64,000 nucleotides of DNA from IMGVR_UViG_3300032240_001991:1-64000, one strand, 5' to 3'. Shown: positions 11,050 to 50,994, counted from the first letter of the stretch. A program made the numbers and translations. Notes: generated by a model not told the origin, from the sequence alone.

Positions 11050-11622
11050 TTATCCCCATGAAATACTAGCGTCGTTTTCTTGAGCAAATTTAATTAATTC
11101 AATTAACTTGTCAATATAATGATTTACTTGATCTTGACTGCGTCCCATGTCTATCATCCTAGGTCCAGTTTTTCCAATATGTGTTACACCTTGATCGTCG
11201 GTGTGTTTTTTACCCATTGGACCTTGCATATCGCTAGGTTCTTGCGTATATTGATTAGTATCTTGATTTTTTAACTGGATGAGTCTACGCATGAATTTTG
11301 GCAAATCTCGGTTATGTATAATTCCAGAATAATCAGGATTTGTAACGCCCAGCATACGTTGTATTTCGTATCCGTTAGAATTACTTACTTGCAATTCTGG
11401 AGCTGCACTTACCCATTCTTCACTTTTACCTTTACCGTCACAACGTCGACATGGATATTCACCGTCGCTCCACGTTTCTTTTCCTGTACCATCACATGCA
11501 AAACACGGCTCTAGTTGTTTGGTCTCCCAGTCCGCACTAGACCAAACTTTTCGTCCATCATAATCTTTTAGCTTTGCCGCGGTAAAGGTCATGCCCTCAG
11601 TTATAAGATCTCGTATTTTCAT
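11050..11622 (-). CDS. Hypothetical protein with DnaJ-type CxxCxGxG zinc-finger pair
   Basis: CFACDGTG and CRRCDGKG; N-terminus MKIRDLITE; late promoter upstream. Confidence 0.6.
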   Translation of the reverse strand: MKIRDLITEGMTFTAAKLKDYDGRKVWSSADWETKQLEPCFACDGTGKETWSDGEYPCRRCDGKGKSEEWVSAAPELQVSNSNGYEIQRMLGVTNPDYSGIIHNRDLPKFMRRLIQLKNQDTNQYTQEPSDMQGPMGKKHTDDQGVTHIGKTGPRMIDMGRSQDQVNHYIDKLIELIKFAQENDASISWG

Positions 11623-11668
11623 CAGTGGTTCCAAAGTTTCAATATTGTATTTATGGCTAAATAATTGT

Positions 11669-12427
11669 ATGAATGAGCTAGATAATGAGCGTCAAGTTGT
11701 AATTGATTATATACGCACCTTCTTAGGTGACGGAATGGTTGATGTAGAATTGGATCCTATCCACTATAATACAGCTATTGATAAGGCACTAATGCGGTAT
11801 CGTCAACGCAGTCAAAATGCTACAGAAGAAAGTTTTGGGTTTATAACACTTCAAGTAGATCAAAACGAATACTTTATGCCTAAAGAAGTTATGCAAGTGC
11901 GTCAAGTTTTCCGTAGAAGTATTGGTTCTCGCTCAGGCGGCGGAGACGGTGGTTCTTTATTTGAACCGTTTAATTTAGCTTATACAAATACATATCTGTT
12001 AAGCAGTTCAAATATGGGAGGACTAGCAACATATTTTGCATTTGCTAGCTACCAAAATTTAGTTGGTAAGATGTTTGGAAGTTTTATTAATTTTGATTTT
12101 AACCCTACAACTAAAAAACTAAGAATATCGCAACGTCCGAGAACAGAAGAAAGCGTACTAATTTGGATGTATAATCATCGCCCAGATTTTAACTTGTTTC
12201 AAGACAACTATGCAGGTCTATGGATTAAGGATTATGCGTTAGCTCAGGCTAAAATCATGTTAGGCGAAGCACGCGAAAAGTTTGGAAATATTTCAGGACC
12301 ACAAGGTCAGGTAACTATTAACGGTCAGGCGCTTAAATCAGAAGGGCTAGCAATGACAGAAAAACTCGATGCTGAGTTAGTTAATAACTTTGATAACCAA
12401 CAACCGTTGACATTTGTTATAGGATAA
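11669..12427 (+). CDS. gp13: Neck protein, T4 gp13-like
   Basis: YIRTFLGDGMVDVELD, WIKDYALAQAKIMLGEAREKF and INGQALKSEG; start at MNELDN after TAAATA. Confidence 0.75.
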   Translation: MNELDNERQVVIDYIRTFLGDGMVDVELDPIHYNTAIDKALMRYRQRSQNATEESFGFITLQVDQNEYFMPKEVMQVRQVFRRSIGSRSGGGDGGSLFEPFNLAYTNTYLLSSSNMGGLATYFAFASYQNLVGKMFGSFINFDFNPTTKKLRISQRPRTEESVLIWMYNHRPDFNLFQDNYAGLWIKDYALAQAKIMLGEAREKFGNISGPQGQVTINGQALKSEGLAMTEKLDAELVNNFDNQQPLTFVIG

Positions 12428-12452
12428 CATAAAATAACTCAAAGGAGTTATT

Positions 12453-13172
12453 ATGATTATTGGCATCTTAGGTTTGATTGGTTCCGGAAAAGATACCGCT
12501 GCAGATTATCTTGTAAATCATCATAATTTTGAAAGAGAGAGCTTTGCTAAAAGCTTAAAAGACGCAGTCTCTAATGTTTTTGGGTGGGACAGAGAGATGC
12601 TTGAAGGAAAAACTGATCAATCTCGATTTTGGCGAGAACAAGAGGATCAGTGGTGGGCAAAGAGACTTAATAAACCTGGTCTTACTCCTCGATGGGTGCT
12701 ACAATATTGGGGCACTGAAGTGTGCCGTTCTGGATTTCATGACGATATTTGGATTGCTGGTTTAGAAAATCGTCTTAGAAATGTTAGTTCTAACATAGTC
12801 ATCTCTGATTGCCGATTTCCCAATGAGATTTCCGCTATTAAAAACTCTGGCGGAATTACAATTAGAGTAAAAAGAAGTGCAGAGCCAGAATGGTACGACA
12901 TTGCGTTAACGCAGTGTCGTGCATCTGTGGAAGAACTAGATAAATTAAAAAACTCTGGACTAGTAATGGAACAAATATATCCAGATGTACACTCTAGTGA
13001 GTGGGCATGGATTGGGTCAGAATTTAATTATATTATTGAAAATAACGGCAGCAAACAAGATCTGTTTAGTCAACTAGAGTCAATCATTAAAAATCCGGAA
13101 TTAGATCCCCTTGCCGCCAAGGTAGATGTAGCGTATGAAGCAGCCGTTGGCAATTGGCACAGATTGTCTTAA
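12453..13172 (+). CDS. Deoxynucleoside monophosphate kinase (T4 gp1-like)
   Basis: GLIGSGKDT P-loop, SFAKSLKD, PRWVLQYWGTE and ISDCRFPNE. Confidence 0.85.
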   Translation: MIIGILGLIGSGKDTAADYLVNHHNFERESFAKSLKDAVSNVFGWDREMLEGKTDQSRFWREQEDQWWAKRLNKPGLTPRWVLQYWGTEVCRSGFHDDIWIAGLENRLRNVSSNIVISDCRFPNEISAIKNSGGITIRVKRSAEPEWYDIALTQCRASVEELDKLKNSGLVMEQIYPDVHSSEWAWIGSEFNYIIENNGSKQDLFSQLESIIKNPELDPLAAKVDVAYEAAVGNWHRLS

Positions 13173-13422
13173 GATTACTATAACTGCAATTATTTAAATT
13201 TCCGTCTATGTGAAATACATTAAATTGCTCGCCCCATTTGCTATTGTAACCGCAACGATCACATTTTAACTTTTTCTTATAACCTGTTTTAGCCCATCGT
13301 GGAGTTCCTTCCTTAGATACACGAGCACAATGATCACATTGTGATCGATAATGTGTTACTCCGTCCTTATGATAATTGATAGCAACAGGCCGACAATTAC
13401 AGCTTTTACATAAGTCTCTCAT
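13087..13422 (-). CDS. Small zinc-binding HNH endonuclease-like protein
   Basis: CxxC pairs and HIDGNLNN...NLKTICANC. Confidence 0.7.
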   Translation of the reverse strand: MRDLCKSCNCRPVAINYHKDGVTHYRSQCDHCARVSKEGTPRWAKTGYKKKLKCDRCGYNSKWGEQFNVFHIDGNLNNCSYSNLKTICANCQRLLHTLHLPWRQGDLIPDF

Positions 13423-20696: not shown

Positions 20697-21365
20697 ATGA
20701 AAAAAACAACATCAAAGATAAAAAAAGAAGCAACAGTGACCTTTACAAAAAACGGTAAAGACATGACCCGTCCGGGCGGCGAACTTGATGTTGAATCTGA
20801 TCCTTTTACAACTAACGAACAAAACAAGAGAGAAAATACCATGGAAAATTTAGACACTAACGCATTGAAATACCTAGCAGGGGTTACAAAAACTATTACA
20901 GAATGCGGAATTCCAATGGCAGGTTCTCATTCTCCCGCAAGCATTAATATTACAGCTAGCAATGGACCAGAACTAACTGGCATGCTTAAGGATCTTATGG
21001 GTTTAGCAGGTATTCATAAATCAGCTGATCCTACAGCAGTGCTAACAACTACTCCAGGTCCAACTATGGCCGCAGCAGATACGGCAGAACCTAGAGAAAT
21101 GCCTTCTATGCAAGATTTAATTAAGAAGGTAACCGGCGGTGAACCAAATCCAGAAATGGTACAAGATAGTATGAACGATAATCGTGTTTATGATAATAGT
21201 CCAGATGAACAAGGTAAAGCAGATAGCAACTGGCCAATTGACGGTGATCGAGATAACAACTTGGTAGCAAACAAAGACATGGTAGTTGATAGAAATAAAG
21301 TAACTGCTGAGAGTTTATTTGCTGCGTACCAAGAATTTATTGCCGAAAATAAAAAAAAAGTTTAA
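20697..21365 (+). CDS. Putative prohead core/internal protein
   Basis: Acidic low-complexity 222 aa with LKYLAG, LMGLAG and ITE motifs; ends at an A9 tract. Confidence 0.5.
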   Translation: MKKTTSKIKKEATVTFTKNGKDMTRPGGELDVESDPFTTNEQNKRENTMENLDTNALKYLAGVTKTITECGIPMAGSHSPASINITASNGPELTGMLKDLMGLAGIHKSADPTAVLTTTPGPTMAAADTAEPREMPSMQDLIKKVTGGEPNPEMVQDSMNDNRVYDNSPDEQGKADSNWPIDGDRDNNLVANKDMVVDRNKVTAESLFAAYQEFIAENKKKV

Positions 21366-38702: not shown

Positions 38703-38918
38703 ATGAGAGCTAAGGACTTTAGCAAAGGTAAAGGATCATCTACTAAACAAGTTAGTACTGCTCCAATTCCAGTTCAAAGGGTTGAAATCCCGTCAGTAGC
38801 AGCAAATCCGTCAAGTAATAATCAGGAACCTATTTTTGGTGTTGATGATAATGATTGGGTTGATGGGTTAAAAGAAACAAATTACTCTGCGTATCTAAAT
38901 TTACGAAACTGGGATTAA
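38703..38918 (+). CDS. Small late protein preceding the AAA gene (same frame)
   Basis: CATAAATA promoter and GAGG SD; MRAKDF N-terminus. Confidence 0.55.
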   Translation: MRAKDFSKGKGSSTKQVSTAPIPVQRVEIPSVAANPSSNNQEPIFGVDDNDWVDGLKETNYSAYLNLRNWD

Positions 38919-38921: not shown

Positions 38922-41486
38922 ATGACTCCAGCTGATCCAACAAATAATCAACAACAGGCTACTCAACAAGCCCAACAACAGGCTCCTCAACAAGCTCCAA
39001 AACTAGCATCACCTGACTTTCAGAGTCAAATAGATTTTATGGCAGGTGTTATCGATAACATGCTATCCGGAGCTAATAAAAGAATTTTAGTTGGAGGAAA
39101 AACTGGTCTAGGTAAAACATCTTTTGTAAAACAGTTTGCTAAAGTTTTTGGATTTCCAACCATTATAGTTGAAATTCCTCATATTGTTGAAGAACAAATG
39201 ATTAACATCCCCTTTGTTATCTTTGATAAAAATGGTCAAAGCTCACAAGGGTACGATCAGGTTAAAATGGAAAAGGAAGGTTCTAGTCCTAAGGTTGAAT
39301 TAGGTAGTTCTTATCTTGCTACAAAATTAGCAAACTTAACAAAACTATCTGATGTTGAATACCGTACAAAAGTTAATAGTTACGACTCAACACTAAAAGA
39401 ATTAATACGTCAATTTGAAGAACAGTATCCTGGAACTATAGCTAAAGTTCGTTCAAAATACGATAAAATTTTATTCTTAGACGAATACTTTAGACAAACA
39501 ACACCCGCCATTAGAAATATTCTTAGAAATATATTAAACGACAGAATTGGTAATGACATTATACCTGCAGGTACATATGTAATGTACGCTTCTAACTTAG
39601 AAGATGTTTCAGGTAGTATTGATCCGCAATCTTCTCACACAACATTCTTTCAGAAAAAGTTTAAGGCTCCAACCAAATCTCAATGGTTATCTTATACTGT
39701 AAGCTCAGCCGTTGGCCAAGGCGTACACATTAAACAAGAAGTAGTAGATGCGTTTGATAAATCTCTTAAAGATGAACACGTTAGCTATGATGATTTAAAT
39801 TTAGAAATAAGAACAAGTCCTAGAAGATGGAGTGACATTTTTATATACATAAACAATGCCTTCCCATTTAAGAGCCCAGATGAGCTAGGAATTTTAAAAA
39901 CAACAATTAAGAAACAATTTCAAAACGATCAAGGAAACACTTCTGATCTATACAATGTAGTAGAAGCATTGCTAGCTAGACTAGCTATTCAATCAAATAT
40001 AGATCCTAAAAAAGTAAAAGAAGTATCCCCCGAGCAGTGGAGAGATGTGTTAGCCCAACAAGTTATGACCGTCATGCAAAGTAAAGGCATGAAGAAATAT
40101 GTTCCAGTCATACAAGGATTGCCCGGTGTAGGTAAGACTGCGATCGGCGGAACTTTTGAGAATCCGCCGTACAACATGAGATTTATTCCAATACTAGCAA
40201 CAACATTGTCTCGTGATAGCGTTGTGGGTATTCCTTTGCCTAAAGAGCAAAATAAACAAATGGGTGTAGAGTTTGCTAAACCAGAATTAGCTATTAAAAT
40301 AGATGACGATATTGAAAGAGCAAATAAGTCCTATTTTAACAGGCTACAGAAAAGAGAAAAAGAAGGCAAGCTAAACGGTAAAACTGCACAAGAAGCTTAT
40401 AGAGATTTTGAAAATCAAGAATACAAATATCTAATTTTTATTGACGAAATTAATCGTGTTAAAGATGTTGCTATCTTTAACAGTTTAAGAAGATTAATAT
40501 TAGAAAAAGAATTCAATGATCAATACAAGCTGCCTAAAGGGGCAGTAGTTGTTGCAGCAATGAATCCGTCGGACCTTGGTACAATTCCAATGACGTCTCA
40601 CTTTAGAGATGCTATTGATCTTATTGACGTTGAACCTAGTTGGAAAGATACAATCAAGTTTATTAAGAACCAAGTTGTTCCTTACCTAAAGAACGAGTAC
40701 AATCCTAGTGACATTGCACTTGATACGTCTTTACAAATTGTTGAAACGTTTCCACAAAACTTCTCTTTAGGAAGAAGACGAACCGCTAAAGAATTTTACA
40801 TTGCAATTGGAGGTTCAGAAGAACTTTACCTAAGTCCTAGAGACTATGACAATATGTTTAAAGTAATTGTCTCTGCAATTGATCGAGTTGCAAACTCACT
40901 TAAAGAGCAAATTAAACGTGGTAAAACTTTCTCACAAGACGAAGTTAACAATCGTATTATTCGTGCAGCAGCTGAAGTAATTGAAAGTACATTTGACGAT
41001 TTATTTTATAAGGCAGGAATGGGAACGCCACCGGGTTGGGATGACCGAGTTCTTAATTTCTTAAATAAGATCGTTGATGTTTCATTACAAATGAAATCAA
41101 CTAAAGCAGGACTAGGATCTTTATTAGACGATGTTATTGCAGGAACAACACAACTAAAAGACGACATAGATTTTGACAACTACATGGCAGATTATATGCC
41201 GGCAAAGTTCCAAAAGGACTTTGACGAATATCTGCACAATATGATCAAAACTACAGAGAACATTCAAGATGTTGTTGACAGTTTAAAAATAATTATAACT
41301 CAATTTGGAACAGCAATTAGAGAAAATCAATTAAATCCTGATGTGTTAAATCGTATAGAAAATACGATACATGTAAACTTTAATGAAGTTCTAAAATCAA
41401 CCGAAGGTAGTGAACAAGAAGACGCTGCTAGATATCTAGCTAAGAATTATAGCGATCTATTAGATATGCTAGGCGTAGATGCGTAA
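38922..41486 (+). CDS. Tandem-domain MoxR/dynein-related AAA+ ATPase
   Basis: Two modules: GGKTGLGKT/LFLDEY/ASN/SPRRW and GLPGVGKT/IFIDEINR/AAMNP/SPRDY. Confidence 0.85.
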   Translation: MTPADPTNNQQQATQQAQQQAPQQAPKLASPDFQSQIDFMAGVIDNMLSGANKRILVGGKTGLGKTSFVKQFAKVFGFPTIIVEIPHIVEEQMINIPFVIFDKNGQSSQGYDQVKMEKEGSSPKVELGSSYLATKLANLTKLSDVEYRTKVNSYDSTLKELIRQFEEQYPGTIAKVRSKYDKILFLDEYFRQTTPAIRNILRNILNDRIGNDIIPAGTYVMYASNLEDVSGSIDPQSSHTTFFQKKFKAPTKSQWLSYTVSSAVGQGVHIKQEVVDAFDKSLKDEHVSYDDLNLEIRTSPRRWSDIFIYINNAFPFKSPDELGILKTTIKKQFQNDQGNTSDLYNVVEALLARLAIQSNIDPKKVKEVSPEQWRDVLAQQVMTVMQSKGMKKYVPVIQGLPGVGKTAIGGTFENPPYNMRFIPILATTLSRDSVVGIPLPKEQNKQMGVEFAKPELAIKIDDDIERANKSYFNRLQKREKEGKLNGKTAQEAYRDFENQEYKYLIFIDEINRVKDVAIFNSLRRLILEKEFNDQYKLPKGAVVVAAMNPSDLGTIPMTSHFRDAIDLIDVEPSWKDTIKFIKNQVVPYLKNEYNPSDIALDTSLQIVETFPQNFSLGRRRTAKEFYIAIGGSEELYLSPRDYDNMFKVIVSAIDRVANSLKEQIKRGKTFSQDEVNNRIIRAAAEVIESTFDDLFYKAGMGTPPGWDDRVLNFLNKIVDVSLQMKSTKAGLGSLLDDVIAGTTQLKDDIDFDNYMADYMPAKFQKDFDEYLHNMIKTTENIQDVVDSLKIIITQFGTAIRENQLNPDVLNRIENTIHVNFNEVLKSTEGSEQEDAARYLAKNYSDLLDMLGVDA

Positions 41487-41495: not shown

Positions 41496-42596
41496 ATGAG
41501 ATTTTTTGAATTTAGACCTGTTATAAATGAAATCCTTTCTAAGAAGGGTGTTGAAAAAGGCAAAGTTGCCTTTAAACGGTCTGACATCTCCGATGCTTAT
41601 ATTGCAAAAGTAATACAACAAGTGTCTACAGAGACTGGTGTACCTTATAATGATCTTATCAACGAAATGACTGCTGATATTGAAAAATTTAAAGAGGTTG
41701 GTAAGTACAGCCCCTTGCTATACGATACAATTATTCAAAACTATGCAGAAAATTCAGCATTTAAATTAATTTGGAAATCAAAGCATCCGGTAAAAAAAGA
41801 AAATTATAAATTAGATGTTGGTGTGTTTAAAGAGCTTTTACGTCTAGTTCAGATGGACCATGAATCTTTTTTTCCTTTAAGAGCGCCCGACGGTTTACAA
41901 ATAATAAACAGAATATCTCCAATTTTAGTTCCGTCTCAGAGACAAGAATATGTAAAGGCAGGGTTCAATACCATTGAAACTGCGGCCGTAACAAATACCG
42001 GCGAATTCATTTTTAATGTACCGTTTTTAGAAAGTTTGCTATATTACGGAACTGCCGTGGATGTAAAGCCACAAGGTAAGAAATATGTAGACAATGGCGG
42101 TACTATTCCTAATAATTATTGCTATATTGAATTTATTATAGTACATGAAATATTACACTGGGCATATGGAGATTTCTTTGCCGGTAACAGATTTAAGCAG
42201 TATTCAGGCAGAGCACACAACATTGCTAGCGATTTAAGATCAAATTATCTTTTAGTAAAGAACGGTTACGAGCAACTGCCGCTAGGCCTATTCAGCGATG
42301 ATTTAAACTTTGATAGACCAGAAACTAATTCTTATCAAAAATTAATTGCTGTAGTTGACAGAGAACTGAAGAAAATGCCAAAGCAGTTGCAAGCATGGAT
42401 TGAAGAAACCACAGGCGGAGATGTGCATCCTCCGGGTGATCCATGGAAACCAAAACCTGGAGAAATCTGCCTTAATAATAAAACAGGCGGGTTTGTGATG
42501 ATTACTAAAGACAACGGCGACGGCACATACGAATCAAACGATTTGACAAAAGAGCAAGTAGAAGCTATCCTTGGAAAAACTGTTAATGTGGGTTAA
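41496..42596 (+). CDS. HExxH metallopeptidase-like protein (DUF2201 N-terminal type)
   Basis: TAAVT....FIFN..F, IIVHEILH and HNIASDLRSN. Confidence 0.7.
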   Translation: MRFFEFRPVINEILSKKGVEKGKVAFKRSDISDAYIAKVIQQVSTETGVPYNDLINEMTADIEKFKEVGKYSPLLYDTIIQNYAENSAFKLIWKSKHPVKKENYKLDVGVFKELLRLVQMDHESFFPLRAPDGLQIINRISPILVPSQRQEYVKAGFNTIETAAVTNTGEFIFNVPFLESLLYYGTAVDVKPQGKKYVDNGGTIPNNYCYIEFIIVHEILHWAYGDFFAGNRFKQYSGRAHNIASDLRSNYLLVKNGYEQLPLGLFSDDLNFDRPETNSYQKLIAVVDRELKKMPKQLQAWIEETTGGDVHPPGDPWKPKPGEICLNNKTGGFVMITKDNGDGTYESNDLTKEQVEAILGKTVNVG

Positions 42597-42602
42597 TTTA
42601 AT

Positions 42603-43808
42603 ATGAGAGTTTCAATTAACGATTTATCACCAATTCAATCAAAAGGCGACGGACCGGGCGGCGACGAAGGCGAAGGTGATCAACCAGGCGGCGATCAACC
42701 AGGCGGCGGCGAAGGCGAAGGTGATCAACCAGGCGGCGATCAACCCGGAAAAGGTAAGGGAAAAGGCAAAGGTAAGGGAGAAGGGCCCGGCGAAGGAGAA
42801 GGCGAGGGAGAAGGCGAGGGAGAAGGGCCCGGCGAAGGAGAAGGAGAAGGAGAAGGCGAAGGCGAGGGCAAGGGTAAAGGAAAGGGCAACGGTACCGGTA
42901 ATTCAGGCGGCGGTGATGACGGCGGTGACGGTGATTGGTTAAATCCTAACAAGGGCGGTGGATCCGGAACAGCAAAAACACCAGAAGAGCAAGATATAGA
43001 AAACAAGTTATCTAAACGGGGCGATAACAATGTTGAAGACTTAAAAAAGCGGCAAGGAGAGCAACAGAAAGCTACTCCTCAAGGTAGTCCACAAAGTGGA
43101 AATCAACAAATAACTAGAACTGACGTTGATATCCGTCCAAAGTTTAGTTGGAGAGATTTAGTACGCCAATTTGTGGCAAATTCTAAACCTCCTGAGACTA
43201 CTTATACTCGCCCTTCAAATAGAGCTGCTACGCAGGTTAGTATTGCTCAGCAGACTGGTGCGGCAGCTATTAAACCTGGTGAAAGACCAGGTGAAGAAAT
43301 TTACAAGTTAGCCTTTGTTTTTGATACTTCGGGTAGCATGTACGGAGCTATAGGTCCAGCACTAGCGGAAACAAGAAATTTATTAAAACAACAAAAAGCA
43401 TCTACAGAATCAACATTAGGAATATGCTTTTTTGCAAGTAGATATCTATTAATAGAAGCTAACTTAATGTCTAATAAAGCATGGAAAGTTGCTTCTTTTA
43501 AGAATATGGGAAAACCAGTACCAGAAACAGCAAAGAAATCTCTTGACGATGTTCTTAGAAGCAGCGATACTGGAGGAACCTACTTTGGACCTGAGTTAGC
43601 ATCAGAACTAGCATCAATTGCTTCAACAGGATTCAATGTTATAATCTTCTCAGACAGCGATATGCTAGACAGCAAAAACTGGAATAATTTCTTAAGTCTT
43701 TATCAACGTTACAAACGACAGGTATTTTTTATTGCTCCCGATTTAAATACGTATAAACAAATAGTTAAAAAATTAGGTATACAACCTAACACCTTTGGAC
43801 ACATGTAA
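42603..43808 (+). CDS. Gly/Glu-rich linker + vWA (MIDAS) domain protein
   Basis: GEGE/GKGK low complexity, then VFDTSGSM (DxSxS), TGGT and IFSDSD. Confidence 0.85.
   Translation: MRVSINDLSPIQSKGDGPGGDEGEGDQPGGDQPGGGEGEGDQPGGDQPGKGKGKGKGKGEGPGEGEGEGEGEGEGPGEGEGEGEGEGEGKGKGKGNGTGNSGGGDDGGDGDWLNPNKGGGSGTAKTPEEQDIENKLSKRGDNNVEDLKKRQGEQQKATPQGSPQSGNQQITRTDVDIRPKFSWRDLVRQFVANSKPPETTYTRPSNRAATQVSIAQQTGAAAIKPGERPGEEIYKLAFVFDTSGSMYGAIGPALAETRNLLKQQKASTESTLGICFFASRYLLIEANLMSNKAWKVASFKNMGKPVPETAKKSLDDVLRSSDTGGTYFGPELASELASIASTGFNVIIFSDSDMLDSKNWNNFLSLYQRYKRQVFFIAPDLNTYKQIVKKLGIQPNTFGHM
42648..42925 (+). repeat. Coding low-complexity repeats (GEGE / GDQPGG / GKGK)
   Basis: Repeated units such as GGCGAAGGTGATCAACCAGGCGGCGATCAACC and GAAGGCGAG. 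Confidence 0.85.
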
Positions 43809-43809
43809 T

Positions 43810-44517
43810 ATGAAACTTAAACAAATTATAAAAGAAAATGAAGATACTTCTTTAATCAAGAAATACTTTGATGAGAGTGGGTTTAGCAAAATAGAAGTTA
43901 CGCCTGACGGGGTTAATGTTGAGGGAGATCTTATATTTCGTAGCGAGACATTACAGGTTGAAGAATTACCAGTAAAATTAAATATTGTAACTGGCAACGT
44001 CGACCTTATGGGGTCAGGAATTAAAACATTAAAAAATATTCCTAACTCTTGTAATTCATTAAATGTAAGTTATAATGGATTAACTTCATTGGCAACTGAT
44101 ACTCCATTAGTCGTTAATTCGTTAGCCGCTGACGGCACAAACATAACAGATTTATCAGGAATAAAACTTAATGGTTTACAATATCTAACTTTAGAATACT
44201 GCGAACAATTAAGAACTCTCAAAGGTCTCGAAGGAGTTGCTGTTAAGGAATTAACACTAAAAGGATGTCCTCTTTTTGAAGACGATCTTAGCAGATATAA
44301 TATTGATATAGTAGATATAGAACTTGCTGATTGTAAAAATATGCCCTTAGTTTTCCTTGTAGCATTTGGAAAACCTCATATTAAAGAAGTAGGACGGGAT
44401 ACCAGTCCTCTAATAAAAATTGCTAAAAAATATTTAGATAAAGGTCCGTCGGTCGTACTTGATCTCGTTAGAGAATTGAGAGACCAAGGATTTAAAAACT
44501 CAGCTAAAGTCCTTTAA
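43810..44517 (+). CDS. Leucine-rich-repeat protein
   Basis: LKNIP...LNVSYNGLTSL, LTLEYCEQLRTLKGL and LTLKGCP; start MKLKQIIKE. Confidence 0.65.
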   Translation: MKLKQIIKENEDTSLIKKYFDESGFSKIEVTPDGVNVEGDLIFRSETLQVEELPVKLNIVTGNVDLMGSGIKTLKNIPNSCNSLNVSYNGLTSLATDTPLVVNSLAADGTNITDLSGIKLNGLQYLTLEYCEQLRTLKGLEGVAVKELTLKGCPLFEDDLSRYNIDIVDIELADCKNMPLVFLVAFGKPHIKEVGRDTSPLIKIAKKYLDKGPSVVLDLVRELRDQGFKNSAKVL

Positions 44518-44527: not shown

Positions 44528-45574
44528 TTACCTATTAGCCTTTGCTTCTAATTGAGTTCTAACTGCTTTTAAAAGAGGAGATAGAACTTTACTTGACCCT
44601 TTAGCAGCTAATCTAGCTGCTACAAGCTCATCTGAAGATTTATCGCCTGTTTCTTGTCGATATTGATCAACGTCAGCTTTAACTGCATTTAAAAATTCGT
44701 CGCTAGTTACAGCTTGTTCAACTGCTTCAAACCAGCTAGCACTATACTGATCTGGTTGCTGTTCCCAATTTTTAATTATAAGATTGTTTTTATCGCCAGC
44801 ACGGATACGGCGTATTTTGACTTGTTTTAACACCTTATCTTTAATTCTGCCTAATCTCGCTGATATACGATTTATTGCTGAGTGTATATCATCCTTGTCT
44901 TTCATGGCAGCACGGACGTCAATTTTTCTTCTTTGCACACTAGCTTTGGTTGGCATATCACCGCTACGACGACCCATTAGCTGTGAAGCTGGTAGTTTTT
45001 CAACTTCTTCTGGATCACGCTCCATTAGTCTATAAACACTGATTGGCTTTTCGCCAATAAAATGTTTGAGCTGATCTGCAATTGTTGCTTTAGTAACTTC
45101 TTTCTTTTCTTTCTTATTATAAGCACCACCGCGTGTGCCTACAATTTCTTTTTCTTGGATACCCTGACCATCTTTCAAACTGAATATACCTGTATATTTG
45201 ATAGTTCTGTCTTTAGCTGGATTATAACCTGGCATTTGTAGCATGCGTTGCAAATACTCTTCTTGAGGCTTAAATGCAGCCCAACCATTTGGTCCTTTTA
45301 GGATCATGAAGTTATCATAATGTCCCTTAAACGTTTCTAGGTCTAAATTTCCTGTAGGGTGTGTAAATGGCACTAATACAGCTTGATCACTAACCTTGTA
45401 TGTTTTATGTAGATACTTGGCTAATCTAACACCTTGCTCATCTCGTCCAAAGGTATTGATTAACGGACTAGCTTCAAACATCAATTCAAGCTCTTCCATT
45501 AGCTCCTGGTCAAACTGAGCATCTTCTTCTATTAGATCTAAGCGATCGCGCATTTCTTGTATTATATTCTTCAT
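44528..45574 (-). CDS. Hypothetical late protein (putative head-packaged)
   Basis: TATAAATA at 45603-10 (minus); N-terminus MKNIIQEMRDRLDLIEE. Confidence 0.6.
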   Translation of the reverse strand: MKNIIQEMRDRLDLIEEDAQFDQELMEELELMFEASPLINTFGRDEQGVRLAKYLHKTYKVSDQAVLVPFTHPTGNLDLETFKGHYDNFMILKGPNGWAAFKPQEEYLQRMLQMPGYNPAKDRTIKYTGIFSLKDGQGIQEKEIVGTRGGAYNKKEKKEVTKATIADQLKHFIGEKPISVYRLMERDPEEVEKLPASQLMGRRSGDMPTKASVQRRKIDVRAAMKDKDDIHSAINRISARLGRIKDKVLKQVKIRRIRAGDKNNLIIKNWEQQPDQYSASWFEAVEQAVTSDEFLNAVKADVDQYRQETGDKSSDELVAARLAAKGSSKVLSPLLKAVRTQLEAKANR

Positions 45575-45610
45575 ACTAGGTTATTCCCTAACGTTGTTAG
45601 TATATTTATA

Positions 45611-46162
45611 TTATTGTGTTTGATCTTTTTGAGATAATCGTTGCTTCTGTTTCCATGCATACTGAGCTGCGCGGTTTATTTCTGATACAAAACTATTATT
45701 GATCTGCATTCTTACTGATATACGATATATGCTAACCGATTCAATTTCAAATAACTTGACTTTACTAGCAGCTGAACTAAATCCTGATTGCTGTAACTCA
45801 GTAGATATCGCATTAGCAAACTCTGGTGTTTTTACCAACAATTCAAATTCTTCAGTAGGAATTTTATCATAAAATGGAGTGTTAACGCTTACTGATAATA
45901 AGGTTGCTGGATTTTCAGACCAAGGAATAAGTTGACCATCTTTAATCGTTCCTATAGCAAAAATAAGATAAGAAAGAAATAGGGGTGTATCTAAATTAAG
46001 TTTGTGCTCGTCATACGATGTATAAGATTTTTGAAAAGCGCAATGATAGTCGTTTCCTTCCTTGTGCTGAAACACAATACGCCTACTGAGGATTCCTGTA
46101 TTTCCCTGGCTTTCAATTAATCGCATAGTCTGCATTAATTTTTGAAATTCTTGATTATTCAT
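45611..46162 (-). CDS. Hypothetical protein, paralog 3 of tandem triplet
   Basis: MNNQEFQKL...LIESQGN.G, LQQSGFS and RAAQYAWK; ATGA overlap. Confidence 0.65.
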   Translation of the reverse strand: MNNQEFQKLMQTMRLIESQGNTGILSRRIVFQHKEGNDYHCAFQKSYTSYDEHKLNLDTPLFLSYLIFAIGTIKDGQLIPWSENPATLLSVSVNTPFYDKIPTEEFELLVKTPEFANAISTELQQSGFSSAASKVKLFEIESVSIYRISVRMQINNSFVSEINRAAQYAWKQKQRLSQKDQTQ

Positions 46163-46713
46163 TTCCTGTGCCTTAATTTCCAAGCAAGGTTTACTGCTCT
46201 TTCCAATGTTTTGCGTAATTCTTCATTAGAATTGTGCCAATGGTAAAGGGCAGAATGCTTGCCGATACTTGCTGATGTAAGCTTGTCGTCATCTAGTGCA
46301 AGTATTTCATCTTTAATAAACATATCAGCACTAAAGCCTGACGCTTGTAGATTCTTAGCAGTAACATCTAACAGCTTTTTTTTAAATTCTTCCGACTGCG
46401 ATAGTTCTTGAAATTGTTCTCTAGTCATTCCTGTATATTTAACGACTATCATTATGCGTAACGGATTGGGTGGTATCCGAAATTGACTAAGTCTTTCCTT
46501 AGACAGCAGATGGATATTAATATCTGTAACGAGAACATTATTAAAGATTTCACCATTTTCAATTTTATCTCTGATAAATGTTGCACGTACAAAGCTTGAA
46601 AAATTAGTATCCGCATCTGCAAACTTTATAAATCTACTGACGATTCCTGAATTGCCTTGACTTTCTAATAGGCGAATAGTTTCTGTTAATTTTTGAAACT
46701 CTTGATTATTCAT
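46159..46713 (-). CDS. Hypothetical protein, paralog 2 of tandem triplet
   Basis: MNNQEFQKL...LLESQGN.G, LQASGFS and RAVNLAWK; ATGA overlap. Confidence 0.65.
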   Translation of the reverse strand: MNNQEFQKLTETIRLLESQGNSGIVSRFIKFADADTNFSSFVRATFIRDKIENGEIFNNVLVTDINIHLLSKERLSQFRIPPNPLRIMIVVKYTGMTREQFQELSQSEEFKKKLLDVTAKNLQASGFSADMFIKDEILALDDDKLTSASIGKHSALYHWHNSNEELRKTLERAVNLAWKLRHRK

Positions 46714-47234
46714 CGCATACGCCTTAATTTCCATGCATGCTTACATGCACGGATTGCTTCTTTTTTAAATTCTTCCGTAACTGACATTTCTATAGATATA
46801 TTGTACTTGTCAGCCCATTCAATATCTGTAAGAGAAACTTCGCTAGCAACTAGACTAAAGCCTATCTTTTGCAAATGCTTAGATATCTCGCCAGAAAATT
46901 GATCAGTACTTGTCATGATCTTGTGGTCAAGCTCAGTACGCTCTTTGTTAGAGATAGGCCAATAACCAAGTTTTATATTTAGGTCTCTATGCCAAAATTG
47001 AATATCGCTGCCATTTGTAGTAACTCCTACAGGATACATAAAAGAAAGTAAGTAATATCCGTCAAATAAATTAACCTCGTTATGATTATATCTCCGGCCA
47101 ACGGTATAGTTGTAACTGTTATTAAATGCAGGATCAATAATAATTGATCTAGTAAGGAGTCCTATGTTACCCTGATTTTCCAGTAACGCTAGTCGCTGCA
47201 TTAGTCTTTGATAAGTTTGTTCTTTGTTACTCAT
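46710..47234 (-). CDS. Hypothetical protein, paralog 1 of tandem triplet
   Basis: LLENQGNIG, LQKIGFS and RACKHAWK; GTAAATA upstream. Confidence 0.65.
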   Translation of the reverse strand: MSNKEQTYQRLMQRLALLENQGNIGLLTRSIIIDPAFNNSYNYTVGRRYNHNEVNLFDGYYLLSFMYPVGVTTNGSDIQFWHRDLNIKLGYWPISNKERTELDHKIMTSTDQFSGEISKHLQKIGFSLVASEVSLTDIEWADKYNISIEMSVTEEFKKEAIRACKHAWKLRRMR

Positions 47235-47968: not shown

Positions 47969-47973
47969 AAATT

Positions 47974-48642
47974 ATGGATACTCAACTGATTGAAAAATTA
48001 ATTTCTCAGGTAGAAACTGCTATTACCCTTGCTGAACAAGGTCAAACTCAATTAACAGAAAAAGAACTGACCTTAGAAGGTATGAGCAGCAGAAAGAATC
48101 GTATTTTTTTAAACGAGCTAGTAAAAAATCCTAACACTCGTTATTTAGAAATTGGTACTTGGCGCGGCAGCACTTTGGTCTCAGCACTATACCGTAACAG
48201 TCCCCAATTAGCTGTAGCTATTGATAATTTTAGCCAGTTTGATGCTGACCAATCTCAGCTACTAACCAACTGTAAAAATAGCGGACTGGAAGAAGGTAAA
48301 GATTTTCAGTTTATCAATCAAGATTGTTTTAACCTAACACCAGAACAAAAAGCTCAAATCAAAGATATCACCGTATACTTTTATGACGGTGACCATAGGC
48401 CTATAGATCAAGAAATGGCACTGACTTACTATCTAGATCACATGGCGGATTATTTTATATTCATAGTAGATGATTGGGATTACTCTGAAGTAAAACAAGG
48501 TACTAGATCAGCACTATATAAAATGCCAGTATCTGTGCACAAAGAGTGGCAGCTGCTCGGAGGTTGGCCTCACAACACAGCTAACACTTGGTGGAATGGA
48601 TTATACGTGGGCGTATTAAGTAAAAAATCTCTAGGAAGATAA
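47974..48642 (+). CDS. Class I SAM methyltransferase (Methyltransf_24-like)
   Basis: YLEIGTWRGST, AIDNFS, YFYDGDH and IVDDW. Confidence 0.75.
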   Translation: MDTQLIEKLISQVETAITLAEQGQTQLTEKELTLEGMSSRKNRIFLNELVKNPNTRYLEIGTWRGSTLVSALYRNSPQLAVAIDNFSQFDADQSQLLTNCKNSGLEEGKDFQFINQDCFNLTPEQKAQIKDITVYFYDGDHRPIDQEMALTYYLDHMADYFIFIVDDWDYSEVKQGTRSALYKMPVSVHKEWQLLGGWPHNTANTWWNGLYVGVLSKKSLGR

Positions 48643-48646
48643 AATT

Positions 48647-49300
48647 ATGCAGATCAGTTACGGACCAATTGAATTAGGCAGACATCAGATAAGGCAAGAG
48701 ATCATAAAGGCAAAGACTGCTACTACAGCAGAATGTCGAGTTATAGATCTTGGTGCCGTAGCAGGACAAGGATGGGCCAGTGATTTAACTGATTTAGTAA
48801 TAGATATCAATGCTAATCCTTTAGACAGTCGCGCACTGGCGTTAGACATATGTGATCCTGAAACATGGGATCAGCTGTTTGATCTAGTAGAAAAGCAGGG
48901 TCTTTTTGACTATGCCATATGCACACATACCTTAGAAGATCTGTATGATCCTATAATGGCTCTGCGATATCTACCCAAAATTGCCAAAGCTGGAGCTATA
49001 TCTATGCCCAGCCTACAGACTGAGCTCTGCAGAGAAGATGATCCTAGATTTTTAGGCTACATACATCATCGTTGGCTTTTTGATCAAGAAGATGGTCAAA
49101 TGCTGTTAGCACCTAAACTTACTTGCTTAGAATCCATCATGAATCCGCCCACTAAGTATAATCCACAACATCAAGAAATACTCTATCGATGGCAGGGTTC
49201 TATTCCCTATAAGATGTTTATGAACAACTATCTAGGCCCGGATACTAATACGGTTATGAACACGTTTAGACAGTTTATCAAGGACAGGGTAACCTTTTAG
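48647..49300 (+). CDS. Methyltransferase-like protein
   Basis: VIDLGAVAG and FDYAICTHTLEDL.DP. Confidence 0.55.
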   Translation: MQISYGPIELGRHQIRQEIIKAKTATTAECRVIDLGAVAGQGWASDLTDLVIDINANPLDSRALALDICDPETWDQLFDLVEKQGLFDYAICTHTLEDLYDPIMALRYLPKIAKAGAISMPSLQTELCREDDPRFLGYIHHRWLFDQEDGQMLLAPKLTCLESIMNPPTKYNPQHQEILYRWQGSIPYKMFMNNYLGPDTNTVMNTFRQFIKDRVTF

Positions 49301-50109
49301 CTGTTTATTTTATTAAAAAATTCTTCAGTAGCCCACTTACTAAAAATAACCTGTTCAGAATTAGGTTCCCTATAAAATCTAACCATAACCTTTATATTAT
49401 GGTCAGCAAAGGTATATTCTTTGCTATTATGTAGATGATAGTGCAGCAGACACTCAGGGATTGGTGTAACATCGTTTTTTAAGTATTGATCTAGATATAA
49501 TACCAAATTTGAATAGTAGGTCATAGCAGCACCGGATCCCATAGCAAACACATCATTGATCTCTTTAAATTCACAGGGTTCTTTAGGCAGTGGCAGTATG
49601 TCAGGAAAAGAGCCTGGTACTAACGGAGGAGGGATTAACAGTGTATTTTCTAGCACAGGCACGTTTAGCTGACCTCGGATAACAGAATCAGGACGCAGGC
49701 GTATTACAAGATCAAATTGCCAACCCTGCTGATTTTCATAGCCTGTGCGCATTTGATTGACCTTATATAACGCCCAAAGCTGTTTATAAAATCTAGGTAC
49801 TAGTCCTAGAGGAACCACGCAAGATTCGTCTGATTCTGATATGATAGACGACGTTACCGTTCCGGGAAACACAGCAGACAGTCTTCTATGGGCTAGCTCA
49901 GGTGTAAGAGATCTCCAAACAGGAGCAACTGAACTTAGCCTACCCCATTTATGACCATTGTAGCTGTGATCATCGTTTTGCTCGTCCCATAGGGCAAAAA
50001 ACCAATACAACTGATCTTGAGCAAAGTGATGTTTAATATAGGCTATGAGATCGCTGGTATCTTGACAGAATCTAGGTTGTCCAGAAATCATCAATGCTAT
50101 GCGTGCCAT
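49297..50109 (-). CDS. Putative glycosyltransferase-like protein
   Basis: IALMISGQPRF, FDLVIRLRPD, INDVFAMG and PECLL. Confidence 0.55.
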   Translation of the reverse strand: MARIALMISGQPRFCQDTSDLIAYIKHHFAQDQLYWFFALWDEQNDDHSYNGHKWGRLSSVAPVWRSLTPELAHRRLSAVFPGTVTSSIISESDESCVVPLGLVPRFYKQLWALYKVNQMRTGYENQQGWQFDLVIRLRPDSVIRGQLNVPVLENTLLIPPPLVPGSFPDILPLPKEPCEFKEINDVFAMGSGAAMTYYSNLVLYLDQYLKNDVTPIPECLLHYHLHNSKEYTFADHNIKVMVRFYREPNSEQVIFSKWATEEFFNKINS

Positions 50110-50139
50110 ACTTGACCTTTATAGCTATTATTATTACTA

Positions 50140-50400
50140 TTACTTACTGTCTGATTGAAAAATGTACCACAGCTTGTTGATGTCACGACCCATATAGTGA
50201 TCTTGACCATAGAGTTCAAAGGCCCGTTTGATCGTTAACACTTGATCTCGTTCACCAGCTTTGGCCTCTGCTTCTTCCTGAGAATACAGCATGGGCTCCA
50301 GTGCAAACCCTCCACGTATGATCACATGATCTCTAATAGGTCTTGGAGCAAACTGCTTACGCCTTGCTTCTGTAGTTTTTGCAAATTCATGTAGACGCAT
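50140..50400 (-). CDS. Small late hypothetical protein
   Basis: MRLHEF N-terminus; ATAAATA upstream on the minus strand. Confidence 0.55.
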   Translation of the reverse strand: MRLHEFAKTTEARRKQFAPRPIRDHVIIRGGFALEPMLYSQEEAEAKAGERDQVLTIKRAFELYGQDHYMGRDINKLWYIFQSDSK

Positions 50401-50658
50401 ATAACAGTTATTTATTGGCGCAGGGCGGAACCCTAGTTCTAAGCGCGAAGCGCGAAGCGGTTTTTAAAAATTTTTTTAGCAGTTATCTACGCTGATAACT
50501 TGGCGTCCACCAAGTGATTAAGTCTATGAAATATGTAGTTGATCAAGCGTATGCCAAAGAACGTAGCTAGAACAGTGATAGACAATTATTTAAGAAAAAT
50601 CTTGCGATCTTTTACTGGTGAGTTTACTATAAATAACTTTCTAAGCGAGCACACAAAC

Positions 50659-50994
50659 ATGACTGACTTAAGAAAACTAGTAAAGCTAATAGAATCCATT
50701 GAATCCAATCTAGGCCAAGAAGACATAGATCTAATTAAGCAGGCTATGGAATATCAACTGGCGCATCCACGCAAAGCTGTGGTAAGTGGTGAAATGGCAT
50801 TTGTATCCAATCGTCTTAACAGTGAATATAATAGACCAGACTTGGGCATGCTGGCATGGCAATGGGCTTGTAACACGCACAGTGGACGAGTATTAGACGA
50901 CTACCCTGAGCTAGTAGCACTTAAAGACAAACTACGCGATATTGATCAGGAAAGCCAAAAAAACTTTCCTGACTGGGGCACTTCTGGTACCTAA
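50659..50994 (+). CDS. Small late hypothetical protein
   Basis: TATAAATA at 50628-35; start MTDLRKLVKLIE. Confidence 0.55.
   Translation: MTDLRKLVKLIESIESNLGQEDIDLIKQAMEYQLAHPRKAVVSGEMAFVSNRLNSEYNRPDLGMLAWQWACNTHSGRVLDDYPELVALKDKLRDIDQESQKNFPDWGTSGT

What the first reader, a model, noticed from the sequence alone, without database searches (positions are those of the whole stretch)
11050..50994. Many accessory proteins begin with T4 capsid-targeting-like leaders: a putative injected-protein cargo set
Seen N-termini: MTKNFKEYLAE (20101), MKIRDLITE (11622-), MRFFEFRPVINE (41496), MKLKQIIKE (43810), MKNIIQEMRDRLDLIEE (45574-), MNNQEFQKL...RL(I/L)E (46162-, 46713-), ...LALLE (47234-), MRLHEF (50400-), MTDLRKLVKLIE (50659), MRAKDF (38703) and MTDLRNFDE (GNAT, 4139-). 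Most have a TAAATA late promoter just upstream or head a late operon. Known: T4 internal proteins carry a ~10-aa capsid-targeting sequence (e.g. MKTYQEFIAE), removed by gp21 after (I/L)-X-E. Inference: the phage packages and injects a peptidase, an LRR protein, a zinc-finger protein and a variable paralog family for immediate host takeover or anti-defence.
Basis: partly seen in the sequence, partly recalled or inferred. Interest (0 to 1): 0.7.

Follow-up and report, generated by a model that had tools for sequence, protein, structure and literature searches.

The report
Capsid-targeting leaders on jumbo-phage proteins

Summary
The window is the first 64 kb of a 326,658-bp Rak2/GAP32-like jumbo myophage that encodes a T4 gp21-type (Peptidase_S77) prohead protease and a gp23-type capsid protein. 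The listed N-termini are all there. A narrower leader, M-[KR]-Φ-x-[EDQ]-[ILF]-[ILM]-x-E, is strongly enriched: 8 observed vs 0.07 expected. A matrix trained only on relatives finds 10/380 N-termini vs 2/1599 internal Met sites. The leader sits on otherwise unrelated proteins (54 proteins, 39 families in six contigs). Its codons vary synonymously, and it matches the mapped targeting (4, 7) and processing (8, 10) residues of the T4 CTS, MKTYQEFIAE.

In the window:
- 11050(-), 43810 and 20101 are well supported. The 20101 family reads MK[NQT]FK[ED]YL[SA]E|S, and F, L and E are invariant in 109 homologues.
- 41496, 38703 and 50140(-) carry partial leaders.
- 44528(-), the three orphan paralogues, 50659 and the GNAT are not supported.

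Packaging, cleavage and injection are inferred. The only experimental support is virion mass spectrometry of two phage PA5oct counterparts. I rate this a new member of a known kind.

The parts
11050..11622 (-). 190-aa Cys-pair (zinc-ribbon-like) protein with a strict 9-mer leader, MKIRDLITE|G. The leader codons are 11596-11622.
   Evidence: PSSM 19.8 bits. All 26 homologues (44-83% id) keep M[RK]xx[ED][LFI][IL]xE, and E9 is invariant. In the AF2 model (pLDDT 86.6), residues 1-7 are below 50 and the fold starts at residue 10. The G001 orthologue sits at a different genomic place. No PDB fold match.
11648..11654 (-). ATAAATA late-promoter-like box, 25 nt upstream of the 11050(-) gene
   Evidence: ATAAATA is the predicted late promoter of CBB and GAP32 (PMC5259590).
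20101..20694 (+). 197-aa conserved virion-protein family with a T4-type leader, MTKNFKEYLAE|S. It lies in the stretch between the tail-tube genes and the large terminase.
   Evidence: 1180 homologues. In the 120 best the consensus is MK[NQT]FK[ED]YL[SA]E|S, with F 109/109, Y 105/109, L 109/109 and E 109/109. The PA5oct homologue EST35_0202 is annotated 'structural protein, ESI-MS/MS'. In the AF2 model the leader is a low-confidence helix (residues 5-11) ahead of a domain that starts at residue 16. An ATAAATA box at 20075-20081 lies 19 nt upstream.
20697..21365 (+). 222-aa neighbour of 20101. Its C-terminus ends ...YQEFIAE-NKKKV (nt 21327-21347), the exact core of the T4 CTS.
   Evidence: The G005 homologue ends LFAEYRKFVGE. 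The next PA5oct gene, EST35_0203, is also an MS-detected structural protein; its homology to 20697 was not tested.
38703..38918 (+). 71-aa protein with a partial leader, MRAKDF: the targeting half is present but there is no [IL]xE. It is the first gene of a late operon, with a CATAAATA box at 38673-38679.
   Evidence: PSSM 1.1 bits. No homologue in G001-G005.
38922..41486 (+). Context only: an 854-aa AAA_5 (MoxR-like) ATPase in the same operon. It has no leader.
   Evidence: Pfam AAA_5, 1.3e-12; phrog_1297 ATPase.
41496..42596 (+). 366-aa HExxH protein with a partial leader, MRFFEFRPVINE|I (the [IL]xE comes three residues late)
   Evidence: PSSM -3.9 bits. No relatives in IMG/VR.
42603..43808 (+). 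Context only: a 401-aa Gly/Glu/Pro-rich protein with a weak VWA hit. Its N-terminus, MRVSINDL, is not a leader match.
43810..44517 (+). 235-aa LRR-like protein with a strict 9-mer leader, MKLKQIIKE|N. Its ATG follows the stop codon of 42603 after one base.
   Evidence: PSSM 11.8 bits. LRR hits are below the Pfam cut-off. No relatives found.
44528..45574 (-). 348-aa late protein (TATAAATA at 45603-45609), N-terminus MKNIIQEMRDRLDLIEE. It is not a leader match.
   Evidence: PSSM -16.5 bits. No family hits. Only a partial 31% match to the middle of a 688-aa G001 protein. No IMG/VR relatives.
45611..47234 (-). Three orphan paralogues (45611-46162/46183, 46159-46734, 46710-47234) that share an N-terminal block with RL[IL]E|[SN]QGN. 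Whether the site is cleaved cannot be tested.
   Evidence: The alignment (A2) keeps L15, E17, Q19, G20 and N21 invariant across the putative site. No homologues anywhere. PSSM -11 to -19 bits.
50140..50400 (-). 86-aa protein with a partial leader, MRLHEF (no [IL]xE). An AATAAATA box at 50409-50415 ends 8 nt before the ATG.
   Evidence: PSSM 0.5 bits.
50659..50994 (+). 111-aa reading from an internal Met (MTDLRKLVKLIE|S), with TATAAATA at 50629-50635. It is probably a late gene, but not a leader match.
   Evidence: PSSM -21.6 bits.
3537..4148 (-). It has no I/L at P3, no late box and no leader, so it is not part of the set.
   Evidence: The family assignment was not tested here.

Best explanation
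The phage uses a T4-type capsid-targeting propeptide. A short N-terminal leader comes in two forms: a 9-mer, M-[KR]-Φ-x-[EDQ]-[ILF]-[ILM]-x-E, and a T4-length 10-mer, M-K-x-F-x-[ED]-Y-L-x-E. It is attached to many otherwise unrelated late proteins.

By analogy with T4 IPI-III, the two hydrophobic residues (T4 CTS positions 4 and 7) would dock the protein to the scaffolding core while the prohead is built. The gp21-type protease would then cut after the [IL]-x-E (T4 positions 8 and 10), leaving the mature protein inside the head with the DNA.

Shown here: the leader exists, is non-random and is conserved at the peptide level. It is shared by unrelated proteins, lies outside the folded domain, is linked to late-promoter boxes, and co-occurs with an S77 protease.

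Inferred: core binding, cleavage, retention in the virion, and ejection into the host.

In the window this applies firmly to 11050(-), 20101 and 43810. It applies as 'possibly targeted, perhaps uncleaved' to 38703, 41496 and 50140(-). It does not apply on present evidence to 44528(-), the three paralogues, 50659 or the GNAT.
For: 1. Machinery. Peptidase_S77 at G000 301697-302329 is 33% identical to T4 gp21. The head module has T4's gene order: portal, small protein, 331-aa acidic protein, protease, scaffold-position protein, gp23-type capsid protein. The capsid protein carries LAE|A, and the CBB capsid protein carries LRE|S, before the first conserved block.
2. Enrichment. In 80 head-module loci of relatives, 18 of 19 six-frame matches are ORF starts, and three permuted control patterns give 0 hits. 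The same DNA pattern gives 8, 8 and 6 hits in G000-G002 against 1, 0 and 1 for the reversed control.
3. Modularity. 54 leader proteins fall into 39 families once residues 1-12 are removed. The 17 in G000 are all unrelated to each other.
4. Peptide-level selection. Arg is encoded by CGT, CGA, CGC, AGA and AGG, and Ile, Leu and Glu codons also vary.
5. Match to T4. The T4 CTS is MKTYQEFIAE (PMC8442874). Residues 4 and 7 serve targeting and residues 8 and 10 serve processing (PMC9026906). The 20101 family keeps F4, Y7, L8 and E10 invariant or nearly so. The 9-mer keeps Φ3, Φ6, [IL]7 and E9. T4 gp21 (MNEPQLLIE) and gp22 (MLKEQLIAE) show the same 9-mer plan.
6. Structure. In both AF2 models the leader is low-confidence and the domain begins just after the predicted cut.
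7. Late and basic. 8/10 strict-leader genes have ATAAATA within 60 nt, against 49/370 other genes (p=6e-6). 6/10 have pI>=9.4, against 38/370 (p=3e-4). T4 internal proteins are likewise basic.
8. Experiment in a relative. PA5oct EST35_0202 (the 20101 homologue) and EST35_0150 (MKINDIITE, the small protein after the portal) are annotated as virion proteins by ESI-MS/MS.
9. Variable islands. Window 38.7-51.7 kb has no counterpart in the closest relative G001, which carries different leader genes at the same place. This resembles the variable internal-protein genes of the T-even phages.
Against: - There is no proteomic, N-terminal or genetic evidence for this phage or for any strict-leader protein.
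- The PA5oct MS list also contains DNA ligase and ClpP, so it is not specific to the virion.
- The PA5oct homologue of 20101 lacks the LxE (MKSFRDYYDA).
- Cultured relatives (CBB, PA5oct, Vibrio 2.275.O, XaC1, Phosso) have only 1-4 pattern hits each against 0-2 for the control. The expansion is therefore clade-specific and cannot be checked against the published virion proteomes.
- The two strict in-window members are acidic (pI 5.6 and 5.1), unlike T4 internal proteins.
- 41496 and 43810 sit in an operon with a MoxR-like ATPase and a VWA-like protein, which could equally be an intracellular enzyme system.
- A pattern derived from T4 alone is not significant in G000 alone (2/380 vs 2/1576), only when six contigs are pooled (11/1242 vs 4/5777, p=3.5e-6).
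Confidence: 0.7

Rival explanations
1. The shared N-terminus is a translation-start feature, not a targeting signal. Many late genes here have the ATAAATA box only 4-8 nt before the ATG, so their mRNAs may be leaderless and may need particular first codons.
For: 6/17 leader genes have the abutting box, against 13/367 other genes (p=6e-5). N-terminal codons are A-rich in general (column composition).
Against: 13 of the 19 abutting-box genes in G000 have unrelated N-termini. Leaders also occur on genes with ordinary 17-29-nt spacing and on operon-internal genes, for example the G002 run at 112-121 kb and gene 43810. The codons vary synonymously while the residues are kept. E9 is invariant across homologues of 44-83% identity. 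An mRNA feature would not reproduce the T4 map of targeting and processing residues.
Confidence: 0.08
2. The leader is a real peptide signal but for another purpose: docking to a different assembly (tail, baseplate, portal), an N-degron or chaperone tag, or a conserved first helix that is never removed.
For: The receptor of the CTS was not found in the literature read here, even for T4. Some leader proteins look like cytoplasmic or exported enzymes: the HExxH protein in the MoxR/VWA operon, and a Tat-signal protein in G001 that starts MRIYEI. Partial leaders lack the cut site.
Against: The end of the leader always supplies [ILM]-x-E, the gp21-type site. The same plan heads T4 gp21 and gp22 and the small protein after the portal in PA5oct, which is found in virions. 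Leader genes lie within and beside the head module (293871, 300309, 304715). Mature parts are often small and very basic, like T4 internal proteins.
Confidence: 0.15
3. Chance or composition: K/R at position 2 plus common Ile, Leu and Glu give such strings without any function.
Against: Column-preserving shuffles expect 0.07 and 8 were observed, with 0 of 2000 shuffles reaching that. Permuted patterns give 0 hits in 925 kb of relatives' sequence, against 19 for the real pattern. The held-out part of the genome reproduces the enrichment.
Confidence: 0.03

Closest known systems
[quoted passage not shown]
   Same: An N-terminal leader of about 10 aa on otherwise unrelated, often basic, late proteins. 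Hydrophobic or aromatic residues at positions 4 and 7, then I/L-x-E. A gp21-type protease in the same genome. Genes that vary between related phages.
   Different: Most copies here are one residue shorter, prefer Arg at position 2 and Ile at position 3, and number about 10-18 per genome rather than 3. They include enzymes and non-basic proteins. One leader family (20101) is a conserved core gene with more than 1000 homologues rather than a dispensable variable one. No experimental evidence.
N-terminal propeptides of the T4 head-core proteins gp21 and gp22 (and Alt)
   Same: T4 gp21 starts MNEPQLLIE and gp22 starts MLKEQLIAE. This is the same 9-mer plan, x-x-x-[QE]-L-[LI]-x-E. The review notes LIE-9 as a likely gp21 autocleavage and targeting site.
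   Different: Those are scaffold and protease components that are degraded or expelled. Here the plan is spread over accessory proteins.
Propeptide-bearing inner-body and ejection proteins of phiKZ, 201phi2-1 and SPN3US
   Same: Jumbo phages that load many proteins into the head and trim them with a gp21-related protease after a Glu.
   Different: In those phages the reviewed cleavage logos show few determinants other than the Glu, often with several cuts per propeptide, and no short shared leader was described in the papers read here. No sequence similarity to the proteins here.
Inner body of Rak2-like phages (phAPEC6, 121Q; PMC7247149)
   Same: Same phage group (capsid protein 68% identical). 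Bubblegrams show an internal protein rod whose components are unknown.
   Different: No link has been shown. The cultured members sampled here (CBB, PA5oct, XaC1, Phosso, Vibrio 2.275.O) have few strict leaders.

Membership tests
T4-type CTS-tagged head-internal proteins | A gp21-type (Peptidase_S77) prohead protease encoded by the same phage | tested here: met
   Pfam PF03420, 86.7 bits (cut-off 27) at G000 301697-302329. 33% identity to T4 gp21, with the conserved H-P and S-S-R-G blocks aligned.
T4-type CTS-tagged head-internal proteins | An N-terminal leader of about 10 residues with hydrophobic or aromatic residues at CTS positions 4 and 7 (the targeting determinants) | tested here: met
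   20101 family: F 109/109 and Y 105/109. 9-mer class: I/A/L/V at position 3 and L/I/F at position 6. The determinants are taken from PMC9026906.
T4-type CTS-tagged head-internal proteins | I/L at P3 and Glu at P1 of the cut site (CTS positions 8 and 10) | tested here: met
   Met for 11050(-), 43810, 20101 and the eight strict leaders outside the window. Not met for 38703 and 50140(-). Displaced by three residues in 41496.
T4-type CTS-tagged head-internal proteins | The leader is shared by proteins that are otherwise unrelated | tested here: met
   54 proteins fall into 39 families at E<1e-4 after removal of residues 1-12.
T4-type CTS-tagged head-internal proteins | Late expression | tested here: inconclusive
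   ATAAATA lies within 60 nt of 8/10 strict-leader genes against 49/370 others. The box is only a predicted late promoter in this phage group. No RNA data exist: only DNA runs hold the sequence.
T4-type CTS-tagged head-internal proteins | Small, basic mature proteins | tested here: inconclusive
   6/10 strict-leader proteins have pI>=9.4 (p=3e-4). The in-window members 11050(-), 43810 and 20101 are acidic (pI 5.1-5.8).
T4-type CTS-tagged head-internal proteins | Presence in the virion with the leader removed | not testable with these tools
   Indirect only: PA5oct EST35_0202 and EST35_0150 are annotated as found by ESI-MS/MS. No N-terminal peptide data.
T4-type CTS-tagged head-internal proteins | Ejection into the host with the DNA | not testable with these tools
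   None.
Rak2/GAP32-like jumbo myophages | T4-like core genes with close similarity to the group's capsid protein | tested here: met
   Capsid protein 68-71% identical to Vibrio phage 2.275.O, Phosso, XaC1, GAP32 and CBB. Sheath, tube, terminase, gp32 and UvsX PHROG hits.

The most novel reading that the evidence does not exclude
In this uncultured branch of the Rak2-like jumbo phages, the T4 capsid-targeting peptide has become a general cargo-loading tag. Ten to eighteen unrelated proteins per genome carry it, and many of them are clustered in variable islands. They include very basic small proteins, a leader-HExxH-GH19 wall hydrolase, an LRR-like protein, a zinc-ribbon protein and, in a relative, a weak PARP-like candidate. 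Several appear to be made from leaderless late mRNAs. On this reading they are loaded into the head, trimmed and ejected. That would make them the so far unidentified inner-body and ejected proteins of this phage group, and the tag would predict packaged effectors directly from metagenomic sequence.
Probability: 0.4. Interest if true: 0.75.

Novelty: new member of a known kind. Interest (0 to 1): 0.55.

Why it matters
Rak2-like jumbo phages have an internal protein body of unknown composition (PMC7247149). Packaged and ejected phage proteins are also a known source of anti-restriction factors, such as T4 IPI*. A sequence tag that can be read from DNA alone would give a short, testable list of candidate head cargo for a whole clade of uncultured 300-kb phages. 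It would also extend the T4 CTS concept to a distant lineage, and offer alternative loading tags for phage-capsid cargo delivery.

Tried and rejected
- Megablast of the window's terminase-to-gp32 stretch (22007-26416) against isolate phages: no match.
- tblastn of the 293871 protein against isolate phages: no match.
- Plan to test the leader against the CBB virion proteome. I dropped it after 71 kb of CBB, including its head module, showed no strict leader. The whole-genome pattern scan later gave only 3 hits in CBB.
- Complex prediction of the protease with the 73-aa leader protein 304715: no verdict, so it counts neither for nor against.
- Profile search with the three paralogues: only the paralogues themselves were found.
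- The search for related loci for 41496, 43810 and 44528: no relatives.
- Foldseek against the PDB. The 11050 model gave nothing significant. The 20101 model gave only a generic S6-like alpha/beta sandwich.
- DUF6321, which follows a leader in one relative's fused gene call, is absent from this genome.
- Sequencing runs: only DNA metagenomes hold the sequence, so transcript starts could not be checked and read laying was not used.
- BLAST alignment of the capsid protein with T4 gp23 is gapped around the cleavage region, so the equivalence of LAE|A with the T4 gp23 cleavage site is positional, not residue-exact.

Full report
**What the window is.** The 64-kb window is the left end of a 326,658-bp IMG/VR virus record. 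PHROG scans identify a tail sheath, tail tube, large terminase, gp32-type ssDNA-binding protein and UvsX. Elsewhere the genome has a Peptidase_S77 (T4 gp21-type) prohead protease at 301697-302329 (86.7 bits). It also has a gp23-type capsid protein at 303468-304643. That capsid protein is 68-71% identical to those of Vibrio phage 2.275.O, Sinorhizobium phage Phosso, Xanthomonas phage XaC1, GAP32 and CBB. So this is an uncultured member of the Rak2/GAP32-like jumbo myophages, which are distant relatives of T4. The head module keeps T4's gene order: portal, an 83-aa protein, a 331-aa acidic protein, the protease, a 365-aa protein in the scaffold position, then the capsid protein. The protease is 33% identical to T4 gp21. 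The capsid protein has L-A-E|A about a dozen residues before its first conserved block. In CBB the same place reads L-R-E|S. This is consistent with gp21-like (I/L)-x-E specificity.

**Checking the observation.** I called genes over the whole genome with a self-trained hexamer, RBS and start-codon model, which gave 384 genes. I then compared true N-termini with internal windows that begin with Met.

When K/R is required at position 2, an [IL]xD control is just as enriched, so that signal is ordinary N-terminal composition.

Clustering the N-termini exposed a much narrower recurring leader: M-[KR]-Φ-x-[EDQ]-[ILF]-[ILM]-x-E. Examples are MRITEIITE, MRITEILLE, MRINEILNE, MRAQEFISE, MKIRDLITE and MKLKQIIKE.
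- Its first half occurs in 17/380 N-termini vs 6/1511 internal sites (p=3e-8).
- Shuffling residues within N-terminal columns, which keeps positional composition, expects 3.9 for the first half. For the full leader it expects 0.07, against 8 observed. No shuffle in 2000 reached either observed value.

**Independent data from relatives.** The portal protein retrieved 80 head-module loci from IMG/VR. I also fetched five large related contigs in full, G001-G005. G001 is 328 kb and its portal is 86% identical.
- In the 80 loci (925 kb), the strict pattern occurs 19 times in six frames, and 18 of these are at ORF starts. Three permuted control patterns occur 0 times.
- Most of those hits head one syntenic gene about 4-5 kb upstream of the portal. 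This is the counterpart of G000 293871, which starts MRITQLLNE. BLAST similarity in that family is confined to the first ~60 residues.
- G001 has 18 and G002 has 11 proteins with the first-half pattern. In G002, nine of them lie in one same-strand cluster between 112 and 121 kb.
- A position matrix trained only on these relatives scores >=8 bits for 10/380 G000 N-termini vs 2/1599 internal Met sites.
- In a six-frame scan of the whole genome, 10 of 13 such hits are the starts of long ORFs.

**Is it a peptide signal?** Four lines of evidence say yes.
- With residues 1-12 removed, the 54 leader proteins of the six contigs fall into 39 families with no detectable similarity. The 17 in G000 are all unrelated to each other. 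Common descent therefore does not explain the leader.
- The leader codons vary freely at synonymous sites. There are five Arg codons, and the Ile, Leu and Glu codons differ too. Selection is on the peptide, not on a DNA or mRNA element.
- In the family of the in-window gene 11050(-), 26 homologues of 44-83% identity all keep the leader, and E9 is invariant.
- AlphaFold models of two in-window families place the leader outside the fold. In the 11050 model (pLDDT 86.6), residues 1-7 are below 50 and the first strand starts at residue 10, right after E9. In the 20101 model the leader is a low-confidence helix at residues 5-11 and the domain starts at residue 16.

**Comparison with T4.** The T4 CTS is MKTYQEFIAE (PMC8442874). 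Suppressor analysis mapped targeting mainly to residues 4 and 7, and processing to residues 8 and 10. Asp at position 10 blocks processing but not targeting (PMC9026906).

The in-window gene 20101 (MTKNFKEYLAE|S) belongs to a family of 1180 homologues. In the 120 best, the N-terminus reads M-K-[NQT]-F-K-[ED]-Y-L-[SA]-E|S, with F 109/109, Y 105/109, L 109/109 and E 109/109. That is the T4 decapeptide position for position.

The commoner 9-mer is the same plan one residue shorter: Φ3, Φ6, [IL]7, E9. T4's own gp21 (MNEPQLLIE) and gp22 (MLKEQLIAE) have this 9-mer plan. The review names LIE-9 of gp21 as a likely autocleavage and targeting site.

**Other properties of the strict set in G000.**
- Eight of ten genes have ATAAATA within 60 nt upstream, against 49/370 other genes (p=6e-6). 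ATAAATA is the predicted late promoter of CBB and GAP32 (PMC5259590).
- Six of ten proteins have pI>=9.4, against 38/370 (p=3e-4). This recalls the basic T4 internal proteins.
- One (105714) combines the leader with an HExxH motif and a GH19 lysozyme-like domain.
- One (304715, 73 aa) follows the capsid gene directly, and its G001 orthologue keeps the leader.

**Experimental hints from a relative.** The only experimental hints come from Pseudomonas phage PA5oct, whose close relative MIJ3 has a capsid protein 68% identical to this phage's. Its homologue of 20101 (EST35_0202) is annotated as found in virions by ESI-MS/MS. So is its small post-portal protein EST35_0150, which starts MKINDIITE. 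That MS list also contains obvious non-structural proteins, so it is weak support.

- Supported: 11050(-) (19.8 bits), 43810 (11.8 bits) and 20101 (T4-type 10-mer).
- Partial: 41496 (MRFFEF, with INE three residues late), 38703 (MRAKDF) and 50140(-) (MRLHEF). These have the targeting half but no, or a displaced, cut site. By the T4 Asp-10 precedent they could be targeted but uncleaved. That is speculation.
- Not supported: 44528(-), 50659 and the GNAT. All score far below zero, and their LxE or FDE is what background gives.
- Not testable: the three paralogues at 45611-47234(-). They share a conserved N-terminal block that runs across the proposed RL(I/L)E|(S/N)QGN site, and they have no homologue anywhere. 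Their true starts are also uncertain.

**Context of the in-window candidates.** Window 38.7-51.7 kb is a variable island that follows the conserved block 7986-38625. None of its genes has a syntenic counterpart in G001, and G001 carries other leader genes at the same place (49175, 51029, 51394). Gene 11050(-) is inserted, with its own late box, between two genes that are adjacent in G001, while its G001 orthologue lies elsewhere. This mobility resembles the variable internal-protein genes of the T-evens.

Against a simple 'cargo' reading, 38703, 41496 and 43810 share an operon with an AAA_5 MoxR-like ATPase and a weak VWA protein. That operon could be an intracellular system.

**Cultured relatives.** They have few strict leaders, 1-4 DNA-pattern hits each against 0-2 for the control. 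G000, G001 and G002 have 8, 8 and 6 hits against 1, 0 and 1. The expansion is therefore specific to this environmental branch and cannot be tested against the published CBB, phAPEC6 or PA5oct proteomes.

**Conclusion.** I put the existence of a non-random, peptide-level, modular leader at about 0.97. Its reading as a T4-type capsid-targeting and cleavage propeptide is the best-supported mechanism, at about 0.7. It rests on the co-occurring protease, the positional match to mapped CTS residues, the late-promoter link, the placement outside the folded domain, and the use of the same plan by head-core proteins. Ejection into the host and a takeover or anti-defence role remain inference. The system is a new member of a known kind, with an unusually large and varied putative cargo set.

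Noticed in passing
whole genome; in the window, genes 23612 (box 7 nt from the ATG), 50140(-) (8 nt) and 51102 (8 nt): The ATAAATA late-promoter-like box ends only 4-8 nt before the start codon of 19 genes in G000 and 23 in G001. A separate class has 13-29-nt spacing. By T4 late-promoter geometry, the short class would give leaderless or nearly leaderless late mRNAs with no Shine-Dalgarno sequence. Leader-bearing genes are over-represented among them (6/17 vs 13/367).
   Followed up: partly
window 21327-21347 (C-terminus of 20697-21365): The 222-aa neighbour of 20101 ends ...YQEFIAE-NKKKV. That is the exact seven-residue core of the T4 CTS, but at a C-terminus. The G005 homologue ends LFAEYRKFVGE. 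It may be a C-terminal propeptide or core-binding helix. The review notes that T4 Alt and gp21 are also processed at the C-terminus.
   Followed up: partly
window 38703-44517: A late operon encodes a 71-aa protein, an 854-aa AAA_5 (MoxR-like) ATPase, a 366-aa HExxH protein, a 401-aa Gly/Glu/Pro-rich protein with a weak VWA hit, and an LRR-like protein. It looks like a MoxR/VWA/metallopeptidase-type module and is absent from the closest relative.
   Followed up: partly
window ~52000-64000 (continuing to ~70 kb in the genome): GC is 0.48-0.50 against 0.35-0.40 elsewhere. The region holds many short minus-strand ORFs and a tRNA-Lys(UUU) at 60487-60562(-). Several of the ORFs are shared with G001, so this is not contamination.
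   Followed up: no
window 829-7928: A block of about 12 genes has no counterpart in G001-G005. It includes paralogue pairs (1711/2025 and 6736/7323). It looks like a second variable island at the contig end.
   Followed up: no
G000 105714-107024 (L009): A 436-aa protein combines the strict leader MRITEILLE|G, an HExxH motif at residue 80 and a C-terminal GH19 lysozyme/chitinase domain (Pfam 3.9e-14; phrog_181 endolysin). Its ATAAATA box lies 4 nt from the ATG. It may be a head-packaged wall hydrolase.
   Followed up: partly
G001 49175-49972(-) and 51394-52281(-) (L110): In the closest relative's island, one leader protein (MRLNELLLE) has a sub-threshold PARP-catalytic hit immediately after the leader. 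Another starts MRIYEI and continues as a Tat signal peptide.
   Followed up: no
whole record: CheckV completeness is given as 36% for this 326.7-kb record but 92% for the collinear 328-kb relative G001. The 36% figure is probably an underestimate.
   Followed up: no
window 47303-49300: Three consecutive small methyltransferase-like genes (FkbM-type Methyltransf_21, _24 and _23) lie inside the variable island.
   Followed up: no
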